A DNA stretch of 64,000 nucleotides from Fimbriosthenelais zetlandica (taxonomy: Eukaryota). Below are positions 3,379 through 60,006 of the stretch, piece after piece. The translations under genes were made by a program, and so were the position numbers. The stretch is taken from assembly GCA_977030845.1 (NCBI GenBank), contig OZ365117.1:1922001-1986000 (forward strand), in the 5' to 3' direction. The notes beneath the pieces were generated by a model that had not been told where the DNA came from, searched no databases, and saw only the letters and a program-made list of their open reading frames with translations. Position 1 is the stretch's first letter, and every line of letters begins with the position of its first letter.

Positions 3379-6300
3379 CTACTCAAGAGACAAAAAGACT
3401 GTAAAAGGAGGGAGGTGGCCGAGGGAGGGTGTGAGCTTACGTTGGGTGACGTCTACGATCCATGGCATGAGAGAGGAGATCTTGGTGTAGACACTGGCGA
3501 GGCCGAGACGTCCACAACCAATACCCCAACTCGTCAGTCCATACAGTGTAGCTCGATCAGTGTGTCCACGAGGAATCCTGGTCATCGGTCCGCCTGAATC
3601 CCCCTATAAACAATAAAACGTCATCAGCTTCCTCTCACCCACCATTAAATACCACGCAACGACCTAGTACATTATTTTGGTTCCCAACAAAAAAGAAGCA
3701 CCCATTTGTGGTGAAGTTAGTCCAGGCACGTTCCCCTGGGACAAGTCAAATACTACAGACACATAGAGCATCGTAACTCATTGAAAAATGTGAATTGAAA
3801 TACTCCCATGAAGGACTCAAAAACTACAGCATGTTATCTTGTTCACAGTCGTTTGGTGAACCGGTACAATTAAGTTCTTAAGAAGATTATTTTGGTGGAT
3901 GGCAGGATGGAGGGATGGATTTGAATTTAGAGATCAAACTCTAGAGATAAAGAACTAGAAGGAGTTGTAGGTACCTGACAAGCATCGTCCAGTCCATCAG
4001 AGCTGGTGTGATCTCCTATAGCACAGATCTGAGTCAATGTGAGCAGCGAGTACTGTGAATGACGCTTCAAGGCTTCCTTACACTCAGTGTCAGACACTAT
4101 GGTGACACGGGCGTATTTCAGTAGAGAGCTCATGTAGCCATTCTCCTTGGTGTTTCCCCAGCCAGAGATATAGCAACCAGAGCCGGGTTTAATGTGGGAC
4201 GTCTCAGGGAGACAGACAGGGCTGGTGTGGTTATTAAAGGTGACCGGTGATGCCAGCTTTAACAGGGCGATGTCGTTATCAAACGTCTGAGAATCAAAGT
4301 GACAGTGGAAGTAGATGTGACTGACGTTGACATGTTGTTCTAGCTCATGTTTGTCACCGTCCTTCAGATGAAGATGTCCCGTCTTCACTGAGACGACGCT
4401 GGGTGATTCTAAACCATATCTATCACAAAATACAAATCATACAACAGATCTCAGAAGTAAGTTCTCAGGCAATGTAGATGTGCACGTAGATAAAGAGCCC
4501 CCAGCTGAAGATCATACGTAAAAACTTTTATCATCAAGATTGTGAGCTGGCTTCACCAATAATATGGCTCTATAAAAATTCTAACTAAAAAAAACTGCCG
4601 CAAGTGTGAGGTGCCGAATTCCTGTGTGGCGACCCCGCTTATTTAAAACATGGGGCACAGATCCCTGCAACGACCAAATTATAATATGAAACTAGAAACT
4701 ATGACTTACATACAGTGAGCGGCAGTGAGCACCCACGTATCATAGATGAGCACGCCTCCACAGAAATGATAATATTCACCATACAGTTCATAGTTGAGGG
4801 ATACCTGCCAGGGTATGTCACCTTCTACAGGCACAAACTTACCACCTACAAAATACACAATACACATCACTGTATCTCTTACTTAACAGGCACAGACTGA
4901 GAGATAGACAGAGAAAGTACAATACAGACGTTATACAGAAAGAGACAAGGCCATAATGAAGTAAGTTTGATTACCTACGATTCGGGAATTGCCCTGCTTC
5001 AACCTGCTGATCCCACATGCAGGAGAACTGTAACTCTGAGCTGAAACTAAACATACACAAATAAAAGAGACAGTTCTTATCTTTCAGGGTATTATTTTCT
5101 TAGTTTAGAAGATCTCTACAAGGAGGCAGGTTAGCAGATCAGTAGCGATGTACCGGTACATAGCAACTAAACGACTGGTAAAATAGTAAGAGTTTGACTG
5201 ACCTTGAGATTTCCCGGTAACAATGAGCTCAGGGGCTTCGAACACTTTGAGAATGACGGAGAAGCCCTGGTCTGTGACGCTACCATCAGACATGAAGCGC
5301 AGCTGAAAACATCAAACATCATGTTACAAACTCACGCCAGGCTCTACTTGAATATTGTATTTATATATGTTATTTGAAGGTGACAGCAGAATGTTTTCCC
5401 CCTTGTTTTTCTCTGTCTTGCTTCATTGTATATGAATGTACTAGTCCGGAATACAGAATTGAATTGAATTGAAATGAGATATGAAGTAGAATGATGTGAC
5501 ATGAATTAATCTAAAGCCGGGAATCCACTGCTGCGATTTTGCTTGCGACACTACTGCGACAAAGGTGATGCTTGTGAAGTTGTGTAAGAATAAAATTTAT
5601 AAATTGTGGTTCAAGTGTCCATGGCCTTAAGGCCGTCCTCCAATGGTAAATTTACCATTGAAACACAAGCATCACCTTTGTCGCAGACGTGTCGCTAACA
5701 ATATCGCAGCAGTCGAGTCCCGGGTTAACTTACTGTGAACATATTACTGACTGAGCGGAGCAGCCTGCCGGAGATGTAACCACAGAGACAACCCAGCAGG
5801 TTACACGCCTGAGACGGCTGATCATGGCAGTCATCACTACGACAGCCGTACGCCAGGAGACGGTCATACGTGCAGAAACTGTAGAACTCTATAGACCCGC
5901 TTACTACATGCATCTCTATAATCTACACCAAAATACACAGAAATACAAGATAAATATAGAGAAAACATCTTTGTAGTCAAAACTTATGGGATTGAGAAAA
6001 GGTAAATGGAGGTGGTCTTCATAACAGGTGTTCACTAATGGTTCCACAGAATGCCCTTTTCCTGCGCAACTTTTCAATTCTGGTACTACACACATTATAA
6101 GCAGGGTCACTTACTGTACCGACAGGACTGCTGAAGATCCACTCCATGTCACAGTTATTAGGGTAGGTTGTAGACGCAGCAGGGAAGGTTAACGTATAAC
6201 TCTCATTGTACTTCAAACTCGTGTGGTGGTTTCTCTGATGACAACTTCCGGCGGCCATGTTGGATTTGAACCGTGCCACGCTTCTTATTGTCGCTACATT

Positions 6301-12400: not shown

Positions 12401-15400
12401 AATCATTGATATATCACTTAATACAAGCTTAATGCATCAACCAGCAATCATGAGACAAGGGATAACATTTAAGTTGAATTTCTCTGACATTGAATCATCA
12501 TAAAGCCTGGAGCACACTAATCCGATTCTCCAATCCATCGCCATCCAATACCCTATTTCTAATGGCATCTAAAGATTGAAATAGTGTCAGTGGTTAGCCT
12601 TACCTAGGTGTATAAAGGACTGTTCAAATTACGAGCATTTGGTGTGAATAAAAATAAAGTTTAGGAGAGCTATCGGATGGTGCCGGATAGAGAATGGGAT
12701 TAGTGTGTTTCAGGCTTAAGAGGTATAATAGATACTGACTGTTTGTCGTCCTCCTGGTTGTTCATGTGGTCCTCTGCTCGGTTGTCCTCCAGGTAGAACC
12801 AGTCTACTCGGGGGTAGTTGACGGCTTCCTTTGACCGCCCACGGTCTGAATAGTTAAACTGTAGCAGGTCTTCTCTCCCGCCCTTCTTGGCGAGCCGCAC
12901 GTATTTACTGTCCGTATCTTTAAAGACGAGCCTCTGTGGGGGCTCGTACGGTACGTCTGATTGGTCAGCTAACATGGGGATCTGACTGACCGGTGGTACA
13001 CCCACAGGCTCACTGCTCCTAGTCTTAGCCGGGGCATGGTAGAACCACCCTGAAATAACGAGAGTTAAATGACTAACAGATCAACTCAATCAACTCACAA
13101 GTAATCATTATATTAGTACCCAATAGATATCTAATTTTCTATCATAATAAATCACAGGAATTGTCGCAGTATATTAGAGAAAAGGGCTATGAAATTGTAT
13201 CAGAATTGAACCAGATTTTCTTTGATTAAAATCAGAAAATGACTAAAAATGTTCAGTAGGTAATAGATATAAGAAAATGTGACAAAAATATATACAAGAG
13301 CTGTGACATTCAAAAAATATCCCCAACCCCCATTTTTCCTAGTGGAATATAGATAGCATACACCTATAATAAAGTGTTTAGTTACTGCTATACCTTCATG
13401 TCTCTATTAATAATATTGAGACACGTCTGATCTGACCTACCTGTGTAGTTGCCATAGAAACATTAAATATATTAGAAGAACACACATTAATGTGAGCTTC
13501 TCAAGCTATGTGAGTCTCCATGTGAGGCCATAGAGGGGTGGATTTTGATCTAATCAGATTCTCACTACTTATTATTCATCAGTGAAAGTTGTGTGAGAAA
13601 ACATACCCAAGTCATCATCTTCAATGTGAAGAACCATGAGGAAAGTAATCACACATTGAATACATCACATTCATAGAAATGTCACAGCAATAAATTCACT
13701 GACAACATGCCATCATACACATGCTGCTAATGTTACATTCTGTACCCAGAAATCCATCATTATAGTCTATCATCTCTTACTGTAGATATTTTAATCATAT
13801 AATCTGGATTCTTCAAAACATGTCAGAAAGTCAATATAGCTGAGGGATGGAGAGTGGGAGAGAGCGAGGGAAAGGGATCCGGAGAGAGGGAGAGAGAGAG
13901 ATAGATATAGGGGGGAGGAATAGATGGAGAATGGGGGGGAGAGTGAGAAAGAAGAAGGGGAAGTGTGGGTGGGGGGGGGGGGGGGGGAGAGAAAGAATAA
14001 TTATAGGTAGGGGGATATGGCTATTGGGTTGATTTTAAGATAATATAAAACCTACAGTGAGTAGGGAGAACATGGAAGTGTTGGGTCAGCTAGATACAAC
14101 ATACCTGAGTGAGATTTACCTGCTTGTAATGAGGCAGGTAGAACTACAGGTGAGCAATGTACCTCTCCCACTAACACTTAACCCAGGCTAATGGCTACTA
14201 CTACATCTATTGGGGATAACATGTCATTGAACCATTAACAACAATTTCTAAAATTGAGAAGGCTACAATTACTCAAAGAGGTGACTATTATCTACTTTGT
14301 AAAATTAAATCAGGTAGGGGGCAGTGCACCTGTCACATGCATTGTTCATTAAACAATTGGTTATAATAATACATGTACAAAATGGTACATGTATGAGGGT
14401 AATGCTCAGTGGGTGGTGGGGATATTAGACCACTCTGTGTGGTAGAGCCCAGCCCTGTTATTACGGCAAGGAGGGCTATACATGTATATGGACATTATGG
14501 TAATTGGGTGTTCTAGTAACTATAGTGTTTGGATGAAGGTGTTAAGTTCAATGTGAGCCCCTGTATTTAGTTGGCCTATACCTTCATTGTTCTGTTCTTT
14601 CCTGCGACCATGCATCTTTAATATATGGCTGAAGTCAAAGTGTAATAAAAGAGAAAAAATACGTGAATTGAATACACTCACATTCATAGTAACCATGCCG
14701 AACCATTCGTGATATGAATACAAGACTCAATTCAATGAAATGGAAATGGATCCCCCCTCACACACAGGCCTAATTAGGCCGCCTATTATATTATAACAAT
14801 TTGTTTACACACCATGCACTAAGAAATATTTCAATGTGCTTCGATCATATAATTCATGACATGGTAGAATAGATATAGGCCTAACGTAGCATTCATAATT
14901 AGGCCTATTTCAATACAATAAATCATGCAACACTCCCATACTAGGCCATACCCATAACACTTGGGGTGAACTTGGTAGCATATATTTTAGGAATAATTGG
15001 GAATAATCCTACCTTGATCGTGTTCTCTCCTTACAGAGACATATTTGGGGACTGTTATTAAAATCAAAGTTATTAAATCAAGGCTGCTCAACCCTCCCTT
15101 CCCTTCACTGTCTCACTGCCCAACGCACCCCGCCCCCAAATAATCAATATTTCCGAGATAACATTTACACATGGCACACACAATATATCAAATCCCGCCA
15201 GGTAGACAGTGAGAGATCAATGCTGGTTAGATGTAAGATTAGAACAGGGACTGGACTCATGTTACGACATATTTCTACACCTGTCTTTTAACTGTCAACT
15301 CGGCGTACTCGCCTCTATGGGCTAGTATGGCTATGCCTGGCCTCGGTAGGCCTCATATTTTCAACCAGCCGGCGCTTAGACCGGGATTTAACCCAACACG

Positions 15401-17372: not shown

Positions 17373-17423
<51 letters not shown>

Positions 17424-17769: not shown

Positions 17770-18308
17770 CCACTAGACGACCCTGCTACATGTAAATAAT
17801 CATGGTAACTTATACAGAGAACTGACACAGACATGTTAATTGTACCTCCAAACTTCTTGTAAGGTATATAGGCCCTGTTATTTTTTATTAGTAAAGTTAA
17901 TGGATGGTTATGATTTGAATTGTTTAAAGGTTAACATGCAATAAAATCAAATGAAAGAAATCCCACTTGATAGTAAAACTATATATAAAAACAATTGTTA
18001 AAGACGCGCCTCAGAGGAGCATGAACGCAGGGTCATACGTGCTGATCTGCTCTAGTGAAGCAGTCCCACGCTAGGGGCGTGTGCTACTCGGGCACCAGGG
18101 GCATGTTACAGAACCATAGGCTAAAGTATTGTTATGAAACAAGCCCTACTGGCCGTGGCACAGACATGTATAGTATTTATAAATGACAAGTCGTGGATGG
18201 GATGCTAGGAGTAATTTATTATATGAATATGTCTTAAAGCATAAAATATTCATCGTGATTCTTGTCTCCAAATCGCCAAATAGAGCCATCAATTCATCCT
18301 CATTTATT

Positions 18309-20155
18309 CTACCACTTTCCATGTCCATGTCCATGGTGACCGTGATGTCCATGTCCATGGTGACCGTGTCCATGGTGACCGTGATGACCGTGTCCATGGT
18401 GGCCGTATTTCTTGCCGTGATGTCCGCCATGATGACCGTGATGATGGTGTCCACCATGTTTATGACCGTAACCGTGACCACCGTACTTTTTGTGACCGTA
18501 ATCATGATGATGAGAACCATAGCCCTTCTTGTGACTGCCTTTCTTGTACCCATGGTGACCGTGATGACCTGACTTGTGACCGTAGTGATCGTGACTGGCC
18601 TTGTGACTGTGGTGGGAGTCTCCGTGATGTGAGTATTTTTTATGTCCATGTTTACCGTAATGGCCGTGTTTAGCGTGTCCACCTTTGTGTCCGCCATGTT
18701 TTGAGCCGTGCATGTGATGTGAGCCGCCTTTATAGTACTTATCATCGTAGCCGTACTCCTTCACGTAAGACGAGCCGTATTTCTTGCCGGCCTCGTAGCC
18801 GTAACCTTTCTTGTGGCCGCCGGAGTACTTCTTACCGTGGTCGTCGTACTTCTTACCGTGGTGCCCGTGGTGGTATTTTTTAGCAGAGTGTGAGCCATGT
18901 TTGCCGTGATCATAATGACCTTTAGAGCCGTGATGTTTAGAGCCGTAGTGTTTTTTCTTGCCGTAGTGGCCGTGAGAATGTTTGTGACCGCCATGCTCCC
19001 CGCCCCCGTAACCATGAGTGTGTTTCTTGTAGCCGTGTTTTGACATTTTGTGACCGTAATCTTTGTGACCGTGGTGTTTGTGACCGTAGTGTTTTTTGTG
19101 GTGATGACCTTCGTGATGGCCACCATGATGATGCCCGTATTTCTTACCATGATGTCCTAAAATATACAAATATAGGAATTAGGATTTTTGAAGGGAAAAC
19201 TAAGGGAATCCTTCCAAATTTGAAGTGAATGAGATGCTAGCTTAAAGTGGAAGTAAAAAGTTCCATCCCTCACTTTACATACCGCCACCATGATGTCCGT
19301 GGTGACCGTGATGTCCGTGGTGCCCTCCATGGTGACCGCCATGGTGACCATGATGACCTCCATGGTGACCTCCATGGTGACCATGGTGTCCATGATGTCC
19401 TGAATATAGACATCAGATTAATGAACATTTGTTAATAAAGATACCTCCTACACAAAACACACAACTCCTCTAAAGCAATAGAATGTGTATAAATCTTACC
19501 ACCCATGTGACCATGGTGTCCGTGGTGTTTGTGGTGTCCATGGTGACCATGATGGCCATGGTGTCCATGGTGACCGTGATGACCATGATGACCTTTGTGG
19601 TGTCCATGATGTCCGTGATGGTGTCCATGGTGACCTTTGTGGTGTCCATGGTGACCATGATGTCCATGGTGACCATGATGACCGTGATGACCATGGTGAC
19701 CATGATGGCCATGGTGACCTATAATACAAGTGATTAATTGGTCAACCAACATGTCACAATATTAACAGTTAGAGAAATGATACAATCTCAGTGAGCACAC
19801 TACTTACCTCCCATATGGTGGCCGCCATGATGGCCGCCATGATGGCCGTGGTGACCTTTGTGGTGTCCATGGTGACCGTGATGTCCATGGTGACCATGAT
19901 GGCCGCCATGATGGCCGCCATGATGTCCCCCATGGTGACCATGATGTCCCCAACCATCAAGTTTCTTAATGTTCATAGCCTCCAGAGCCTCCACGGCTTT
20001 CATCACTTCAGATTGAGAAAGCGCTGAAAGAAGCAGACAGAGATTGAAGACAATGTGTTAATAATTAAAATATTTACAATAAAATAGAATAAAAATGGCA
20101 GCAAATACTTACCAACAAAGGCGGAGAGGAGGAGGAAGGCCACGGCTATCTTCAT
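18309..20155 (-). CDS. Secreted His/Gly/Lys/Tyr-rich structural-type protein, paralog A, 480 aa
   Basis: Five exons (20113-20155, 19808-20023, 19500-19718, 19283-19399, 18309-19156), all introns phase 1. Signal peptide MKIAVAFLLLSAFVGA, pro-like segment ending KKLDGWGH, (GHH)n blocks, a K/Y-rich core and the C-terminus HGHGKW. Synonymous codons vary across the repeats. Confidence 0.9.
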
Positions 20156-20320
20156 CTTGTCTCTGATAAATCCACAGCCCGAAAAATGAAATAAGGCTGG
20201 ATGGAGCCGGAGAGACGCTGGAGACGTGCTCCAGGAAGTGACGTAGACGTGACGTTTAGTGGAGAAAGTGAGGAGTGAGCGGACACAGAAATAAATGTTC
20301 ACATGATGCCAGCCTTACTG

Positions 20321-20328
20321 CTTATATA
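20321..20328 (-). promoter_or_regulatory. TATA box of His-rich paralog A
   Basis: TATATAAG about 165 nt upstream of the ATG; paralog B has the same motif in a similar position. Confidence 0.6.
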
Positions 20329-21814
20329 CTGACACAAGTCACACAACCTGACACATTCCATCATAACATCACACATGTTGACACAACCAAATTTACATGA
20401 CCACTAAAATAATGTCAAATTCATTTAATAATTATCAAAATTGATAATATTAAGGATCAAATAATCCATGAAAAATGTTTGATATAGGAGAACTAATTGT
20501 ATGATATACGAGGACTTCTTTTATCTTATGCGATAAAAAGATGATTTCAAGATTTTCTGGATATTTTGGAGAAATTTTAAATTTAATAAGATAATTAGTA
20601 TGAGGAGTTTATGGTGAGTGGACGGAGGGCAGTGAGCCGGGAAGGTAAGTATCTTACACGTCACGGGTCAGTGAATTTATAAAATCCACAATCAACAAGT
20701 TCTTTACATTCACAGACATTTTTTTTTATCCCAGAAAAGTATTAATCAAATAAAGGATTAATTATAAATCACAGTCGTGATGAAGGACTTTCTGATATTT
20801 TTGTTCAGATTTGGTATAGAAATAAGATATTATGACGCCTTTATTTTTTGGGGGAGCATTCCTTTGGGGGGAGAAGATAGAGAGCAAGATATTGGACGGT
20901 ACTACAAATGTGCGATGACCGATTCGTAGCAATGTGCGCCCCCCCCCCCCCCCACCCCCCCCCCCCCCCCCCCCCAACCGCTCATCATTTGCAGGCACCC
21001 ATTTCTTAGTTAACTAGCGAGATGTAACCAAAGCTTTTTGAACGAGTTTTGTATTAAAATTGATGAGGAAAACGAACTTAATGAAGACAAAACTAACCTA
21101 GGCTAAACAGGAATAATTAACGAATTCGAATTGGTTCTAACATAGAGATTTTAGCGCACTCCTCACTGAATGTGCTCCAATAATACTCAATGAATTCAGT
21201 CACCTAGTGACATGGATATCAACCTCTCATCACTGGCGCCCTCTGGTGTGACGAGGTGTCATCACACTCAGACAGTCGGTCCAAACTAATTTAATGTCTG
21301 TGGTTTCGGTCCAACTTAGTTTGAACAGACTGTACTAAATATGGGGCTTTTACTGCATTTTGTCAGAGGCAAAATACAGACCCAATTATTATTTGTCACA
21401 AGTAATTATATTAAATTTTAAAAGCTATTCATCTCTTTTAGTAGTTCTTTATTGAAAGCTTGTCACTGCAATGTTAAAGACTTATTGTATGTATATAATG
21501 TATACATATTCTTTATTTTATATCAATAATATGAATCTGCCAGATATGGATAAGGAAATACTTGGAACAACAGTTGAATTGCCATGCTAGTAATGTTTTA
21601 TTTCTCATGTTGATGTAGTCAGACAGGAAGGGTAGAGCCATCAGTTTCATTATTAAATCATTTGTACAAATCATTCAAATCAGTATAGGGACTGGAGAGA
21701 TTAAATATATAAAGAGAAAATGCTCAGACCAGACAATTTATTAGTGTCTGTATCAGGACTGAATCTGTTCACAGAGTTGAAGCTACCTTATTAAACTTTA
21801 TATCTACTACTGTA

Positions 21815-23237
21815 CTACCATTTACCATGACCCCCGTGACCATGGCCTCCGTGACCATGGTGGCCATGGTGACCTCCATGACCGTGGTGTCCATGGTGAC
21901 CATGGTGTCCATGGTGACCGTGATGTCCATGATGTCCACCATGATGACCTCCGTGATGATGACCGTGATGACCTTTGTGATGGTGACCATGATGATGGTG
22001 TCCATGGTGATGGCCGTGACCATGGTCACCGTATTTTTTGTGACCGTAACCATGTTTGTGACTGCCGTAACCCTTCTTGTGACTGCCCTTCTTGTAACCG
22101 TGGTGACCATGGTAACCCTTCTTGTGACCGTACTTATCGTGCTCGTATTTGTGACCATGTTTGTAATGACCATGTTTAGAGTATTTCTTGTGACCATGTT
22201 TACCATGGTGACCGTGGTCATGGTAACCATGTCCATGGTCACCATACTTCTTGCCGTGCATGCCATGTTTAGAACCCTTGTACCACTTCTTCTTGTGCCC
22301 CCACTTCTTGACGTATGATGAGCCGTATTTCTTGCCGGCCTTGTAGCCCCAGTGCTTGCTGTGACCGCCCTTGTAATGCTTGCCGTGCTTCCCGTACTTC
22401 TTGCCGTGATGATCGTGATGATATTTCTTGGCTTTGTGACCGCCATATTTCTTGTGACCGGAGTGACCGTGAGCATGATGACCTTTGTGACCGTAACCTT
22501 TCTTGCCGGCCCAGTGACCGTGACCGTGCTTGTGACCATGGTGTTCACCTGCCCCGTAACCATGGCTAGCCTTCTTGTAACCATGGTGACCCATATGGTG
22601 ACCGTAACCTTTCTTACCATGATGGTCGTGACCGTAATGCTTCTTATGATGATGACCGTCATGATGACCATCGTGATGGTCACCATGGTGATGACCATGA
22701 TGTCCTCCATGGTGACCGTGGTGTCCATGGTGACCGTGATGACCATGATGTCCACCATGATGACCGTGACCATGCCCGTGACCATGGCCGTGACCGCCCC
22801 ACCCGTCATCATGCCCCCATCCATCCAGCTTCATCAAGCTGAGAGCCTCCAGTGTTTTAACCTCCATAGCTTCACTCTCAGCTGTAGCTGCAAGATTAAA
22901 AAAACCCACGTTAAATAATGATTAAAAACATGCTGGTTAAATAATAACACACAAGATATTAAAGCTGAATCCATACTAAATCTGAATACTTATGCCCTAT
23001 CAAATAATTTGCAAGGTATATAATCTGAACATGGTTAAATAATGACAGGACACACAAGATAATAAAGCTGAATCCATACTAAATCTGAATATATAGAATC
23101 ATTTCAAGGTTAACATCTGAATGCAGATCATTAGATTTATACTGAAGTTTTCTACTGAAAGTTTTTTTTCAATAAAAATGTTTGAACTCACCTATGAAAG
23201 CTGAGAGGAAGAGGAGGATGAGGAAGGCCAGCCTCAT
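21815..23237 (-). CDS. Secreted His/Gly/Lys/Tyr-rich structural-type protein, paralog B, 372 aa
   Basis: Two exons (23192-23237, 21815-22887). Signal peptide MRLAFLILLFLSAFIGA, then ...MKLDGWGH, His/Gly blocks, a core containing AGKKYGSSYVK and the C-terminus HGKW, all shared with paralog A. Confidence 0.92.
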
Positions 23238-23358
23238 TGTGGCTGGAGGACGCTGGAGCTACACCAGGGCTAGATGAGACGCGGAGTATGACGTGGATGT
23301 GACGGTGAACAGTAGAGCGGAGTCCCCGCCTTCTCTCCTCCCACCACCCTACACCACT

Positions 23359-23366
23359 CTTATATA
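23359..23366 (-). promoter_or_regulatory. TATA box of His-rich paralog B
   Basis: TATATAAG about 120 nt upstream of the ATG. Confidence 0.6.
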
Positions 23367-23852: not shown

Positions 23853-35380
<11,528 letters not shown>

Positions 35381-51002: not shown

Positions 51003-51809
51003 TTATACAGAATACAGCAAGGCTAAAACAACCGCCAAGCTCGTCATAACGCTCAGTGACGTCATTCTACTTCCTGTTCCGGTAGGTAGAGTAGAGGTCA
51101 TCTTGATGACATTGAAGGTCGCGTCCCCCTTGTCTGAGGTTCTCTCTAGCATGGCAATCACTCTAAACTTGTCACACGGTGAGATGAGAACGTTCTCTGT
51201 ACGTCCTGAGACTACATCAGACATGTCTACGTTACGTAGCGTGGACAGTGAATAAACTGTGCCGTCATTTCCGGCGTCCTGCTCTGCTCGGAGTAGATTC
51301 GTGTGAGCCATGGCATATCCAGGGTACTTGGTGGTTCCGTTAATATCACACCCTGACTGTGAAGACGCTCTCTCCGTCACTCCGACGTGCACAACACGTC
51401 TCCTCACACCCCAATCCTTCTTTAATTCAGTATAAGCTTGACTCAGGAAGTAATGTAGACCTTTGTATTTAAAGTCTGGCGCTTTAACAGATCCATGTTG
51501 ATGGAGCTGGCTGACATAGTCCTTATAGATGTCACTAGACGCCGGCGTGAACACTCTCACTGCACGGTAAGCCTCCTCTCCCAGCCCCACATCATCCTCG
51601 ACCTTGATCCGGTTCCATTCATTGTGAAGGACATTATTCTCCTGTAATTCGTCATTGAGGATTGATTTGTATTCCTCATATTCCTGATTAGTGAAGGTAT
51701 AATTAACACATATGGCGGCCTCGTCCACCTCGGTTTTCGTCAGACATCCCGTGGACTGAGATGTAGCGAGGGTCCACACAGTGACCAGAACCAACAAAAT
51801 ACGCTCCAT
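51003..51809 (-). CDS. Ecto-ADP-ribosyltransferase (ARTC)-like protein, probably GPI-anchored and catalytically degenerate, 268 aa
   Basis: Single coding exon with an acceptor at 51832. Signal peptide MERILLVLVTVWTLATSQS; FKYKGLHYFLSQAYTEL matches the ART motif FxFKxLHFLLTxALxLL; ENVLISPCDKFRVI matches EEVLIPPxExFxVI; hydrophobic C-terminus SVMTSLAVVLALLYSV*. Confidence 0.8.
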   Translation of the reverse strand: MERILLVLVTVWTLATSQSTGCLTKTEVDEAAICVNYTFTNQEYEEYKSILNDELQENNVLHNEWNRIKVEDDVGLGEEAYRAVRVFTPASSDIYKDYVSQLHQHGSVKAPDFKYKGLHYFLSQAYTELKKDWGVRRRVVHVGVTERASSQSGCDINGTTKYPGYAMAHTNLLRAEQDAGNDGTVYSLSTLRNVDMSDVVSGRTENVLISPCDKFRVIAMLERTSDKGDATFNVIKMTSTLPTGTGSRMTSLSVMTSLAVVLALLYSV

Positions 51810-58516: not shown

Positions 58517-59299
58517 TAAAAGAGTTAACTTAAATTTATATTGAGTCTAAAACACAACTACAATCTTTAATACATATATTAAATACATAGTAAAGCTTGT
58601 GTGGCTGCTAGCAGGATAAATTAACCGAGAATTAATGAAGTAGAAATCCTTGTTTGGCAACATGACACAAACATTCCTACAACACCTGGCTCGGTACTGC
58701 TGGCAACTACACAAGCCTCATAACCTATATTAATGTTTATATCAATATCAGTTATAATTCTCGATATCCATATCGAGTTATTTCTTAATTAATCACGAGA
58801 GAATTTACTTTTCAGTAAAAAGTAATTTTAATTTTAATATATAAATACTTTCATGTGTAGACATTAGTGTTCTCACAAGTATGAATAGTGTAGCAGTAAA
58901 GATATCTAAAAATCAAAATAGTTCCAAATTCAACAAAAATGAAAAAGTCACTCAAAAAAACCACACATTTACTTTTCTTCTAAAATTTAAAACCTCCAGA
59001 TTTTATCAAAATTAATCTTGATAAACAACCCAAAAAATATATATACCTGGTACAAATAATAGAGCTTATTGCCTAAAAAGTGATCGAGCTCTAAAAGTAG
59101 GAATTTAGTTAGACAGGCATTAGGGAGAGGGAGCATGTCATGAGGTTAGGGAGGTTAAGGTATATTGTTAAGCCTCCGTCAAAGTAAATCCAGGCCTAGC
59201 CTTAAAATTAAGGCCTTTTCATTGACAAAATTGATCCTAGTTATAATATCCCCAGTTTTCCAGAACCTGGAGTTTTTAATTTAAAAAGTAAGGACATTT

Positions 59300-59880
59300 C
59301 CAGGTTTCCAGGATGTGGAGGAACCCTGGGATAGGGCTCAGGACAGGGAAGAACCCTGGGATAGGGCTCAGGACAGGAAGGAACCCTAGGATAGGGCTCA
59401 GGGCAGGTAGGAACCCTAGGACAGGGCTCAGGATAGGGAAGAACCCTGGGATAGAGCTCAGGGCAGGAAGGAACCCTGGGATAGGGCTCAGGACAGGAAG
59501 GAACCCTAGGATAGGGCTCAGGACAGGTAGGAACCCTAGGACAGGGCTCAGGACAGGTAGGAACCCTAGGATAGGGCTCAGGACAGGTAGGAACCCTAGG
59601 ACAGGGCTCAGGACAGGTAGGAACCCTAGGATAGGGCTCAGGACAGGTAGGAACCCTAGGACAGGGCTCAGGACAGGTAGGAACCCTGGGATAGGGCTCA
59701 GGACAGGTAGGAACCCTAGGACAGGGCTCAGGACAGGTAGGAACCCTAGGATAGGGCTCAGGACAGGTAGGAACCCTGGGATAGAGCTCAGGACAGGTAG
59801 GAACCCTAGGACAGGGCTCAGGACAGGTAGGAACCCTAGGACAGGGCTCAGGACAGGTAGGAACCCTAGGACAGGGCTTG
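59300..59880. repeat. 30-bp minisatellite (gggctcaggacaggtaggaaccctaggata)n, about 19 copies
   Basis: Direct tandem units between the two tetraspanin terminal exons. Confidence 0.95.
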
Positions 59881-60006
59881 TAGAGTGACATAAGACTAGT
59901 AGGACTTTCCACGACACTACGAACCCCCGGTGAGAGGAGGTGCAATCATGACAGGTTTACCTGACGTTAAAATCGAACCTTTCTTTTTAATTAGGTCGCT
60001 GTTTGA

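What the first reader, a model, noticed from the sequence alone, without database searches (positions are those of the whole stretch)
18309..23237. Tandem pair of secreted His-rich / Lys-Tyr-rich / His-rich triblock proteins: candidate metal-crosslinked biomaterial system
Seen: both proteins have a signal peptide, a short pro-like segment ending KLDGWGH, long (GHH)n/(GHG)n blocks at both ends, a central K/Y/H-rich block, the end HGKW, and no Cys. Synonymous codons vary, which points to selection on the protein. Known: His/Gly-rich secreted proteins harden Nereis jaws (Nvjp-1, Zn) and Glycera jaws (Cu/melanin); G/K/Y/H polycations form sandcastle-worm cement; His-rich ends crosslink mussel preCols. 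Inference: a pH- and metal-switched coacervating or sclerotising protein family in which His ends bind Zn/Cu and Tyr/Lys allow DOPA-quinone crosslinks. It is more basic than Nvjp-1 as I recall it. An antimicrobial or metal-sequestering role is the alternative.
Basis: partly seen in the sequence, partly recalled or inferred. Interest (0 to 1): 0.8.

Follow-up and report, generated by a model that had tools for sequence, protein, structure and literature searches.

The report
Two secreted histidine-rich triblock protein genes
Two neighbouring genes of an invertebrate (probably a marine worm) encode secreted, floppy, strongly positive proteins that are one-third histidine, built like the metal-hardened proteins of worm jaws and mussel threads but unrelated to them in sequence; their tissue and job are untested.

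Summary
Two minus-strand genes encode secreted, Cys-free proteins. Gene A has 2 exons and gives 372 aa; gene B has 5 exons and gives 480 aa. Composition is His 33-39%, Gly 26-28%, Lys 12-14%, Tyr about 6%. Each has a (GHH)n-type block at both ends and a 209-aa Lys/Tyr/His/Gly middle, and ends in HGKW.

They are real, old paralogues. The middle blocks align without gaps at 69% identity, with saturated synonymous sites and dN/dS about 0.12. The end blocks hold 190 His codons and no Gln, although Gly third positions vary freely.

The proteins are predicted to be disordered (pLDDT 40). The calculated pI is 9.9, and the charge falls from about +150/+210 at pH 5 to about +35 at pH 8.2. Aromatic residues are the best-conserved class and are evenly spaced.

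No relative turned up in Pfam, PDB, 5.8 billion clustered proteins or 1.84 billion representatives, and a control shows a paralogue-level relative would have scored E = 1e-62. The conserved modules of the Nereis jaw protein family (Nvjp-1) are absent.

Best reading (about 0.45): a pH- and metal-switched extracellular structural or adhesive polycation. It is an analogue, not a member, of the known jaw, cement and byssus proteins. There are no expression data. Earlier notes in this scan report other Gly/His-rich loci in this genome.

The parts
23359..23366 (-). Gene A TATA box (TATATAAG), 129 nt upstream of the ATG
   Evidence: The identical octamer lies upstream of gene B.
23289..23304 (-). Gene A conserved 16-mer CGTCACATCCACGTCA, about 62 nt after the TATA box. 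It is a probable 5' leader or downstream promoter element with two ACGTCA half-sites.
   Evidence: The pattern has only two matches in the 64 kb window, one before each gene (0.12 expected by chance).
23192..23237 (-). Gene A exon 1: ATG plus most of the signal peptide, with a GTGAGT donor and a phase-1 junction
21815..22887 (-). Gene A exon 2, the rest of the 372-aa protein and the TAG stop. Sub-parts: conserved N-segment 22885-22811; N-terminal His/Gly(/Asp) block 22810-22655; central K/Y/W/H/G block 22654-22028; C-terminal His/Gly block ending HGKW 22027-21818.
21737..21742 (-). Gene A AATAAA polyadenylation signal, 72 nt after the stop
20321..20328 (-). Gene B TATA box (TATATAAG), 173 nt upstream of the ATG
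20239..20254 (-). Gene B copy of the conserved 16-mer (CGTCACGTCTACGTCA)
20113..20155 (-). Gene B exon 1: ATG plus signal peptide, with a GTAAGT donor and a phase-1 junction at the same place as in gene A
19808..20023 (-). Gene B exon 2 (216 nt, phase 1-1): end of the signal peptide, the conserved N-segment ending KLDGW, and the first (GHH)n module
19500..19718 (-). Gene B exon 3 (219 nt, phase 1-1): a pure (GHH)n/K module
19283..19399 (-). Gene B exon 4 (117 nt, phase 1-1): a (GHH)/(GGHH) module
18309..19156 (-). Gene B exon 5: end of the N-terminal His block; central K/Y/H/G block 19106-18480; C-terminal His/Gly block ending HGKW 18479-18312; TAG stop 18311-18309
18303..18308 (-). Gene B AATAAA directly after the stop codon. 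A second AATAAA lies at 18220-18215.

Best explanation
The two genes encode paralogous extracellular, intrinsically disordered 'telechelic' polycations that most likely serve as structural or adhesive material. The target could be jaw, bristle, tube lining or cement; the tissue is unknown.

Shown here:
- secretion signal
- triblock layout
- purifying selection
- predicted disorder
- a large pH-dependent charge swing

Inferred mechanism:
1. In an acidic secretory granule the 120-190 histidines are protonated (about +150 to +210 per chain). The chains therefore stay expanded and soluble, or are packed with a polyanion.
2. On release into seawater (pH about 8.2) the histidines lose their charge and about +35 remains, from lysine.
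3. The (GHH)n end blocks then become free ligands for Zn2+ or Cu2+. Because each chain has two such ends, metal bridges link chains into a network.
4. The evenly spaced Tyr/Trp 'stickers' flanked by Gly, together with His and Lys in the middle block, give His-Tyr hydrogen bonds, cation-pi contacts and aromatic contacts. These favour a dense liquid phase, alone in high salt or with a sulfated or phosphorylated partner.
5. Tyr could later be oxidised (DOPA, di-Tyr, quinone-Lys) to cure the material.

The three in-frame (phase 1-1) His-module exons of gene B would let splicing tune the length of one sticky end.
For: Gene reality:
- Canonical GT..AG introns, a shared intron position in the signal peptide, TATA boxes and AATAAA signals.
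- The 209-aa middle block aligns ungapped at 69% identity, with pS 0.71 (saturated), pN 0.22 and dN/dS about 0.12.
- 190 His codons and no Gln in the end blocks, against 37% purines at Gly third positions.

Chemistry:
- His 33-39%, Gly 26-28%, Lys 12-14%, Tyr 6%, no Cys.
- pI 9.9; charge +150/+209 at pH 5 and +34/+37 at pH 8.2.
- AlphaFold pLDDT 39.7 with no secondary structure.

Sticker pattern:
- Aromatic positions are the most conserved residue class: 22 shared of 28 and 25, with four W<->Y swaps.
- They are more evenly spaced than in shuffles (CV 0.47 against 0.88) and are flanked by Gly (z about 3).

Precedents from papers:
- Glycera MTP (Gly 49%, His 40%, GGH/GGHH/GHH repeats) binds Cu2+, which triggers phase separation. 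Nvjp-1 (His 27%, Gly 36%, Tyr 7.3%) assembles with Zn2+ and with rising pH (PMC9999432).
- Squid beak His-rich proteins phase-separate on His deprotonation, followed by His-Tyr hydrogen bonding (PMC6884462).
- A Gly/Lys/DOPA mussel peptide coacervates in seawater (PMC9526746).
- The His-rich ends of mussel preCols cross-link with Zn, and Pc-4/Pc-5 are His-rich basic cement proteins (PMC12621633).

The end blocks obey the MTP grammar: the longest His run is 4 and the longest Gly run is 2-3.
Against: - There are no expression, localisation, proteomic or biochemical data.
- I did not verify the species, so whether it has jaws, builds tubes or uses cement is unknown.
- A residual charge of about +35 at seawater pH opposes self-association unless salt, metals or a polyanion intervene.
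- There is no sequence homology to any characterised material protein.
- No tyrosinase, peroxidase or other curing enzyme was seen among the larger ORFs of the window.
- The composition fits antimicrobial or metal-buffering roles equally well.
Confidence: 0.45

Rival explanations
1. A humoral defence protein. It would be a secreted His/Lys-rich polycation, or a precursor cut into peptides, that binds microbial surfaces and polyanions (LPS, DNA, glycosaminoglycans). Its activity would be switched by pH and Zn2+/Cu2+, like histatins, shepherins or the His-rich region of vertebrate histidine-rich glycoprotein.
For: - pI 9.9, a net charge of about +35 at pH 8, and disorder.
- Gly/His-rich peptides such as shepherin I gain antifungal activity and form fibrils with Zn2+ (PMC10698721). 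Histatin 5 is Zn-dependent (PMC7559477).
- The Atlas look-alikes are auto-named 'histidine-rich glycoprotein-like', but at a weak score of 0.82.
- Tandem duplication with divergence is common for immune effectors.
Against: - The proteins are 40-51 kDa, far larger than known His-rich antimicrobial peptides.
- The mature proteins contain no Arg and show no conserved dibasic KR/RR processing pattern.
- dN/dS of about 0.12, with strict conservation of aromatic positions, is unlike the diversifying selection often seen in effectors.
- A symmetric two-sticky-end layout has no obvious use for killing microbes.
Confidence: 0.2
2. An extracellular metal buffer, store or carrier. It would be a high-capacity Zn/Cu/Ni-binding protein of body fluid or mucus, used for metal homeostasis or detoxification rather than for building a material.
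For: - 124 and 186 His per chain, arranged as HH, HGH and HxH motifs, could bind tens of ions per molecule.
- The protein is secreted and has no fold to disturb.
Against: - The conserved Lys/Tyr middle block, with evenly spaced aromatics, is unnecessary for chelation.
- 12-14% Lys contributes nothing to binding these metals.
- Known invertebrate metal carriers are folded or Cys-rich (from general knowledge; not tested here).
Confidence: 0.12
3. A matrix protein for a mineralised or chitinous structure, or an egg, cocoon or mucus coat component. It would act as a polycationic binder of chitin, sulfated mucins or mineral precursors.
For: - The composition is basic, Gly-rich and disordered.
- A heparan-sulfate-type sulfotransferase gene lies 23 kb away, which is a very weak link.
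Against: - No chitin-binding or other domain was found.
- Nothing ties the pair to mineral.
- This rival overlaps the best explanation and differs from it mainly in the partner.
Confidence: 0.1

Closest known systems
Glycera (bloodworm) jaw multi-tasking protein, MTP
   Same: - Secreted, Cys-free and disordered.
- His about 40%, built of GGH, GGHH and GHH units with occasional Lys and no long His or Gly runs. This is exactly the grammar of the end blocks here.
- MTP shows Cu2+ binding and Cu-triggered phase separation.
   Different: - MTP is 30 kDa, Gly 49%, lacks Tyr and has no block structure.
- The proteins here have Gly 26-28%, Lys 12-14% and Tyr/Trp 6-8%, plus a 209-aa non-repetitive conserved middle and a conserved N-terminal segment.
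The exhaustive HMMER search gave no hit.
Nereis jaw protein Nvjp-1 and its paralogues (e.g. Nai11527)
   Same: - Signal peptide, with His/Gly-rich stretches at both ends.
- Tyr-bearing middle with GY, YG and KY motifs.
- Disordered.
- Nvjp-1 assembles with Zn and with rising pH.
   Different: - Nvjp-1 is acidic to neutral (Asp 9.1, Glu 6.4 mol%), with His 27% (16% in Nai11527).
- It carries two conserved modules (..SHYxYKGYD..GGY..). These are absent here: alignment scores equal those of shuffled sequence, z 0.1-2.8, against 7.6 for the family's internal control.
- Anchor motifs from the proteins here do not occur in the published N. aibuhitensis set.
Sabellariid (sandcastle/honeycomb worm) cement polycations Pc-1, Pc-2, Pc-4, Pc-5 and Sa-5
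   Same: Basic, Gly-rich, Tyr(DOPA)- and Lys-bearing, partly His-rich secreted proteins. They condense with polyanionic partners and divalent ions (PMC12621633). The middle block here has this chemistry.
   Different: - Cement proteins have far less His (Sa-5 8.6%).
- They use short peptide repeats and have no (GHH)n end blocks.
- No sequence match was found.
Mussel byssal preCols (His-rich terminal domains)
   Same: Block-copolymer logic: two His-rich metal-coordinating ends flank a different central block, giving reversible Zn/Cu cross-links.
   Different: - The preCol centre is a collagen triple helix with silk- or elastin-like flanks, and its ends are much less His-rich.
- There is no homology, and it comes from a different phylum.
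Squid beak histidine-rich proteins (HBPs)
   Same: Disordered His/Gly/Tyr proteins. Their phase separation starts with His deprotonation and His-Tyr hydrogen bonds (PMC6884462).
   Different: - HBPs also rely on hydrophobic residues (Ala, Phe; PMC9999432), whereas the proteins here have almost none.
- HBPs are not Lys-rich.
His-rich antimicrobial peptides (histatins, shepherins)
   Same: Gly/His- or His/Lys/Tyr-rich, disordered, and activated by Zn/Cu.
   Different: Those are peptides of about 24-40 residues. Here the proteins are 356-464 mature residues with a conserved block architecture.

Membership tests
Nvjp-1 family (Nereis jaw proteins) | Detectable sequence homology, including the twice-repeated conserved module (F/Y-x-S/T-H-Y-x-Y-K-G-Y-D ... 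G-G-Y ... G-K-Y) seen in all published members | tested here: not met
   Smith-Waterman scores of two modules against both middle blocks equal those of composition-preserving shuffles (z 0.1-2.8). The family-internal control gives z 7.6. The exhaustive phmmer search returned no hit.
Nvjp-1 family (Nereis jaw proteins) | Composition: His about 27%, Gly about 36%, Asp+Glu about 15%, Tyr about 7%, few Lys | tested here: not met
   Here His is 33-39%, Gly 26-28%, D+E 3.6-4.8%, Lys 12-14% and pI 9.9, against the values in PMC9999432. Only Tyr (about 6%) agrees.
Nvjp-1 family (Nereis jaw proteins) | Located in the Zn-rich jaw; assembles with Zn and rising pH | not testable with these tools
   No expression or biochemical data are reachable.
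Glycera MTP-type Gly/His jaw protein | Sequence made almost wholly of GGH/GHG, GGHH and GHH/HHG units, with at most about two consecutive Gly or His and interspersed charged residues | tested here: inconclusive
   This is met by the end blocks (longest His run 4, longest Gly run 2-3, only K/D/M/W/Y interruptions). It is not met by the whole protein, because 209 of 372 or 480 residues form a K/Y-rich non-repetitive block.
Glycera MTP-type Gly/His jaw protein | No Tyr; Gly about 49%, His about 40% | tested here: not met
   Tyr+Trp is 6-8% and Gly 26-28%.
Glycera MTP-type Gly/His jaw protein | Homology to the MTP sequence | tested here: inconclusive
   No MTP sequence could be fetched. There were no hits in 1.84 billion representatives, but I do not know whether MTP is in that library.
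Sabellariid cement polycations (Pc-1/2/4/5, Sa-5) | Sequence similarity to Pc/Sa proteins, with short Gly/Tyr/Lys or His peptide repeats | tested here: not met
   No hits in any protein search. The middle block is not a tandem repeat: TRF finds only short 15-30-nt two-to-three-copy matches.
Sabellariid cement polycations (Pc-1/2/4/5, Sa-5) | Polybasic, Gly-rich, Tyr-bearing secreted protein | tested here: met
   This is a property shared by many unrelated proteins and is not proof of membership.
Secreted His-rich disordered material proteins (functional class, not a homology family) | Signal peptide, disorder, His of at least about 20% together with Gly, and no Cys-based fold | tested here: met
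Secreted His-rich disordered material proteins (functional class, not a homology family) | Presence in an extracellular solid or adhesive, with metal- or pH-driven assembly | not testable with these tools
   This needs in situ hybridisation, proteomics and recombinant assays.
His-rich antimicrobial peptides | A short mature peptide released from a precursor at defined processing sites | tested here: not met
   There is no Arg and no conserved dibasic-plus-spacer pattern. The KK pairs sit inside the conserved block, and the only N-terminal KK (gene B) is not conserved in gene A.

The most novel reading that the evidence does not exclude
These genes found an undescribed, lineage-restricted class of extracellular 'telechelic' metal-coordination polymers. 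The class would have arisen independently of the Glycera MTP and Nereis Nvjp-1 proteins. In it, two (GHH)n sticky ends and an aromatic/lysine sticker-spacer middle together encode a pH- and metal-gated transition from liquid to solid. Cassette exons would set the length of one end, and so the valency of cross-linking.
Probability: 0.3. Interest if true: 0.75.

Novelty: new variant of a known kind. Interest (0 to 1): 0.5.

Why it matters
Only a handful of natural proteins show how histidine-metal bonds make hard or self-healing materials without mineral. Those are MTP, Nvjp-1, preCols and the squid beak proteins. This pair would be an independent solution that joins three design ideas in one small, Cys-free and easily expressed chain:
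- MTP-like metal-binding ends
- a mussel- or cement-like Lys/Tyr middle
- a block layout that should give a network of defined valency

If it is expressed in a secretory gland, it would give materials scientists a ready template for pH- and metal-triggered coacervate glues or hydrogels. It would also show that such proteins evolve repeatedly in worms.

If it turns out to be an immune or metal-buffer protein, it would still be among the most histidine-rich secreted animal proteins described.

Tried and rejected
Searches and tests that led nowhere:
1. Word-indexed homologue searches found nothing. I ran the whole protein, residues 1-60 and residues 80-290.
2. Exhaustive phmmer against 1.84 billion representatives gave 0 hits. 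The control was phmmer of A against B at the same database size, which gives E = 1.7e-62. The blank is therefore not just HMMER's composition filter.
3. Pfam and PDB sequence searches found nothing.
4. The ESM Atlas returned only compositional look-alikes from arthropods (DUF4779, score 0.82), below the level that means anything.
5. Full-text searches for the anchor peptides found nothing, either in 8 million papers or in the N. aibuhitensis jaw-protein supplement.
6. Similarity to the Nvjp-1 modules is rejected by the shuffle test.
7. The idea that the N-terminal segment is an amphipathic helix or pro-peptide has no support from the hydrophobic moment, AlphaFold or a conserved cleavage site.
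8. Exon duplication with related introns in gene B is rejected; the introns show no similarity.
9. tblastn with filters off finds no extra family members elsewhere in the window.
10. The species could not be identified. An exact look-up of the neighbouring ART protein is not on record, and Atlas neighbours of two flanking genes are uninformative.
11. No cross-linking enzyme was found among the larger ORFs of the window.


Full report
**What is there**

The region 18309-23237 holds two tandem genes on the minus strand.

| | Gene A | Gene B |
|---|---|---|
| Exons | 23237-23192 and 22887-21815 | 20155-20113, 20023-19808, 19718-19500, 19399-19283, 19156-18309 |
| Protein length | 372 aa | 480 aa |

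- All introns are GT..AG.
- Both genes have a phase-1 intron at the same point of the signal peptide.
- Both have a TATATAAG box, 129 and 173 nt upstream of the ATG, and AATAAA signals after the stop.
- Both carry a shared 16-mer, CGTCAC(A/G)TC(C/T)ACGTCA, 62-74 nt after the TATA box. It occurs nowhere else in the 64 kb; a scan allowing two mismatches found only these two sites against 0.12 expected.
- Its conservation stands out because synonymous sites between the genes are saturated. It is probably a common regulatory or 5'-leader element. That is an inference.

**The proteins**

Composition:

| | His | Gly | Lys | Tyr | Trp |
|---|---|---|---|---|---|
| A | 33% | 26% | 14% | 6.5% | 1.9% |
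| B | 39% | 28% | 12% | 6% | 0.4% |

- Neither protein has Cys or Pro, and the mature chains have no Arg.
- After the signal peptide comes a conserved non-repetitive segment of about 25 aa: TAESEAMEVKTLEALSLMKLDGWGH in A and LSQSEVMKAVEALEAMNIKKLDGWGH in B.
- Next is a His/Gly block of about 52 aa in A and about 176 aa in B.
- A 209-aa Lys/Tyr/His/Gly block follows.
- A 56-70-aa His/Gly block ending HGKW closes the chain.
The refinements are that B has five exons and that the end blocks are mainly (GHH)n and (GGHH)n.

**Are they real genes?**

- The middle blocks of A and B align without a single gap over 209 residues, at 69% amino-acid and 69% nucleotide identity.
- Over that block pS is 0.71 (saturated) and pN 0.22, so dN/dS is about 0.12 or lower. 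This is an old duplication held by purifying selection in this reading frame.
- The repetitive ends cannot be aligned, but an internal test works. They hold 190 His codons (110 CAT, 80 CAC) and not one CAA or CAG, while 37% of Gly third positions are purines.
- If His third positions drifted like Gly ones, the chance of seeing no Gln would be about 1e-38 (a crude but clear test).
- TRF finds only 64-100% matching DNA repeats beneath nearly perfect peptide repeats.
- The many other ORFs over this DNA (Val/Thr/Met-rich) are frame artefacts of the CAY-GGN periodicity.

**Physical properties**

- The calculated mature masses are about 40 and 51 kDa, and the pI is 9.9.
- The net charge is +150/+209 at pH 5, +64/+81 at pH 6.5 and +34/+37 at pH 8.2 (standard pKa values).
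- AlphaFold2 without an alignment gives mean pLDDT 39.7, pTM 0.16 and no secondary structure. This is the behaviour reported for Nvjp-1 (PMC11090348).
- In the middle block the aromatic positions are the best-conserved residue class. Of 28 and 25 positions, 22 are shared, with four W<->Y swaps. Acidic positions are hardly conserved at all.
- Aromatics are more evenly spaced than in shuffles (CV 0.47 against 0.88 +/- 0.15 in A, and 0.63 in B). They sit next to Gly more often than chance (z about 3).
- This is the 'sticker and spacer' layout typical of phase-separating disordered proteins, a point I take from general knowledge.
- The longest His run is 4 and the longest Gly run is 2-3.

**Relatives**

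None was found in any of these searches:
- Pfam and PDB sequences.
- 5.8 billion 90% clusters, searched by whole protein, N-terminus and middle block.
- Exhaustive phmmer against 1.84 billion representatives.

As a control, A against B at the same database size scores E = 1.7e-62. A relative as close as the paralogue would therefore have been seen.

Other checks:
- The Atlas gave only arthropod 'histidine-rich glycoprotein-like' compositional look-alikes, at 0.82.
- The anchor peptides occur in no paper of the library, nor in the published Nereis aibuhitensis jaw-protein set.
- The window holds no further copies.
- Caveat: these libraries cover invertebrate genomes only partly, and this genome's own proteins seem to be absent from them. 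'Orphan' here means orphan in these libraries.

**Comparison with known systems**

- **Nvjp-1 family.** Every member printed in PMC13120676 carries two copies of a conserved module (..SHYxYKGYD..GGY..GKY..). Against the middle blocks here these modules score no better than against shuffles (z 0.1-2.8), while the two modules against each other give z 7.6. Composition differs too: Nvjp-1 has Asp 9.1 and Glu 6.4 mol% and few Lys (PMC9999432). This pair is not a member.
- **Glycera MTP.** It is 30 kDa, Gly 49% and His 40%, built of GGH/GGHH/GHH units, and lacks Tyr. It shows Cu2+-triggered phase separation and catechol-oxidase-like activity. The end blocks here follow the same grammar. The whole proteins do not.
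- **Sabellariid cement proteins.** They share the basic Gly/Lys/Tyr chemistry of the middle block but have far less His (Sa-5 8.6%).
- **Mussel preCols.** They share the logic of two His-rich ends around a different centre.
- **Squid beak proteins.** They supply the mechanism for pH-triggered His-Tyr phase separation. A Gly/Lys/DOPA mussel peptide shows coacervation of a polycation in seawater.

**Most likely mechanism (confidence about 0.45)**

Shown here: the proteins are secreted, disordered, under selection, triblock, and carry a large charge swing across the His pKa.

Inferred sequence of events:
1. The chains are stored protonated and soluble (or packed with a polyanion) at acidic granule pH.
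2. On secretion into seawater the histidines deprotonate.
3. The two (GHH)n ends chelate Zn2+/Cu2+ and bridge chains into a network.
4. The middle block adds His-Tyr, cation-pi and aromatic contacts that favour a dense phase.
5. Its Tyr and Lys later allow oxidative curing.

Exons 2-4 of gene B are all phase 1-1 (216, 219 and 117 nt). Any of them could therefore be skipped in frame, which would change the length of one sticky end. This too is an inference. Their introns are unrelated to each other, so the split is old.

**Rivals**

- A pH- and Zn-switched antimicrobial or polyanion-binding humoral protein (0.2). Precedents are shepherin I and histatin 5.
- An extracellular metal buffer (0.12).
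- A binder for chitin, mineral or sulfated mucin (0.1).
- Arguing against the first two are the size of the proteins, the lack of processing sites, the low dN/dS and the conserved aromatic pattern. None of these is decisive.

**Limits**

- I could not identify the species.
- Several independent notes of this scan call the genome annelid. Examples are s1-196127 and s1-198367, the latter citing a Platynereis-type sCAP peptide.
- Other notes report further Gly/His(/Tyr)-rich secreted loci elsewhere in this genome (s1-210709, s1-210718, s1-191757).
- I did not test any of these notes.
- No transcript, tissue or biochemical evidence was reachable.

**Verdict**

The pair is a new variant, by convergence and not by homology, of the known kind 'secreted His-rich disordered material proteins'.

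Noticed in passing
window 20939-20975 (+): A 37-nt homopolymer C run (G on the minus strand) in the spacer between the two genes. It produces the poly-Gly ORF listed at 20762-20998.
   Followed up: no
window 17374-17419: A perfect (TA)23 microsatellite about 900 nt downstream of gene B.
   Followed up: no
window 22888-23191 (-), gene A intron 1: The intron holds two copies of a 27-nt motif (TTCAGATTTAGTATGGATTCAGCTTTA) 103 nt apart, so part of the intron is internally duplicated.
   Followed up: partly
window 31052-32034: A long 21-nt-period tandem repeat that is open in several frames on both strands (PEALSTS-type, mucin-like). It lies inside the mosaic receptor gene that another note (s1-223692) describes.
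   Followed up: no
window 59241-59945: A tandem repeat open in three frames (PEPCPRVPTC-type), near the tetraspanin gene noted as s1-223694. It is probably intronic or a minisatellite.
   Followed up: no
window 12700-13005 (-): An ORF piece that matches Pfam DUF5524 (E 4e-13). It is an exon of an uncharacterised conserved gene.
   Followed up: no
window 45981-46817 (+): A long exon for a heparan-sulfate 3-O-sulfotransferase-like enzyme (Pfam Sulfotransfer_1 and Sulfotransfer_3; Atlas score 0.95), 23 kb from the His-rich pair.
   Followed up: partly
window 3927-4388 (-) and 33277-33702 (-): A trypsin-like serine protease exon (E 1e-26) and a discoidin/F5-F8 type C exon (E 7.5e-11).
   Followed up: no
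window 51006-51809 (-): A single-exon, signal-peptide-bearing ecto-ADP-ribosyltransferase-like gene (Pfam ART, E 6e-9). Its exact product is not on record in the assembly collection.
   Followed up: partly
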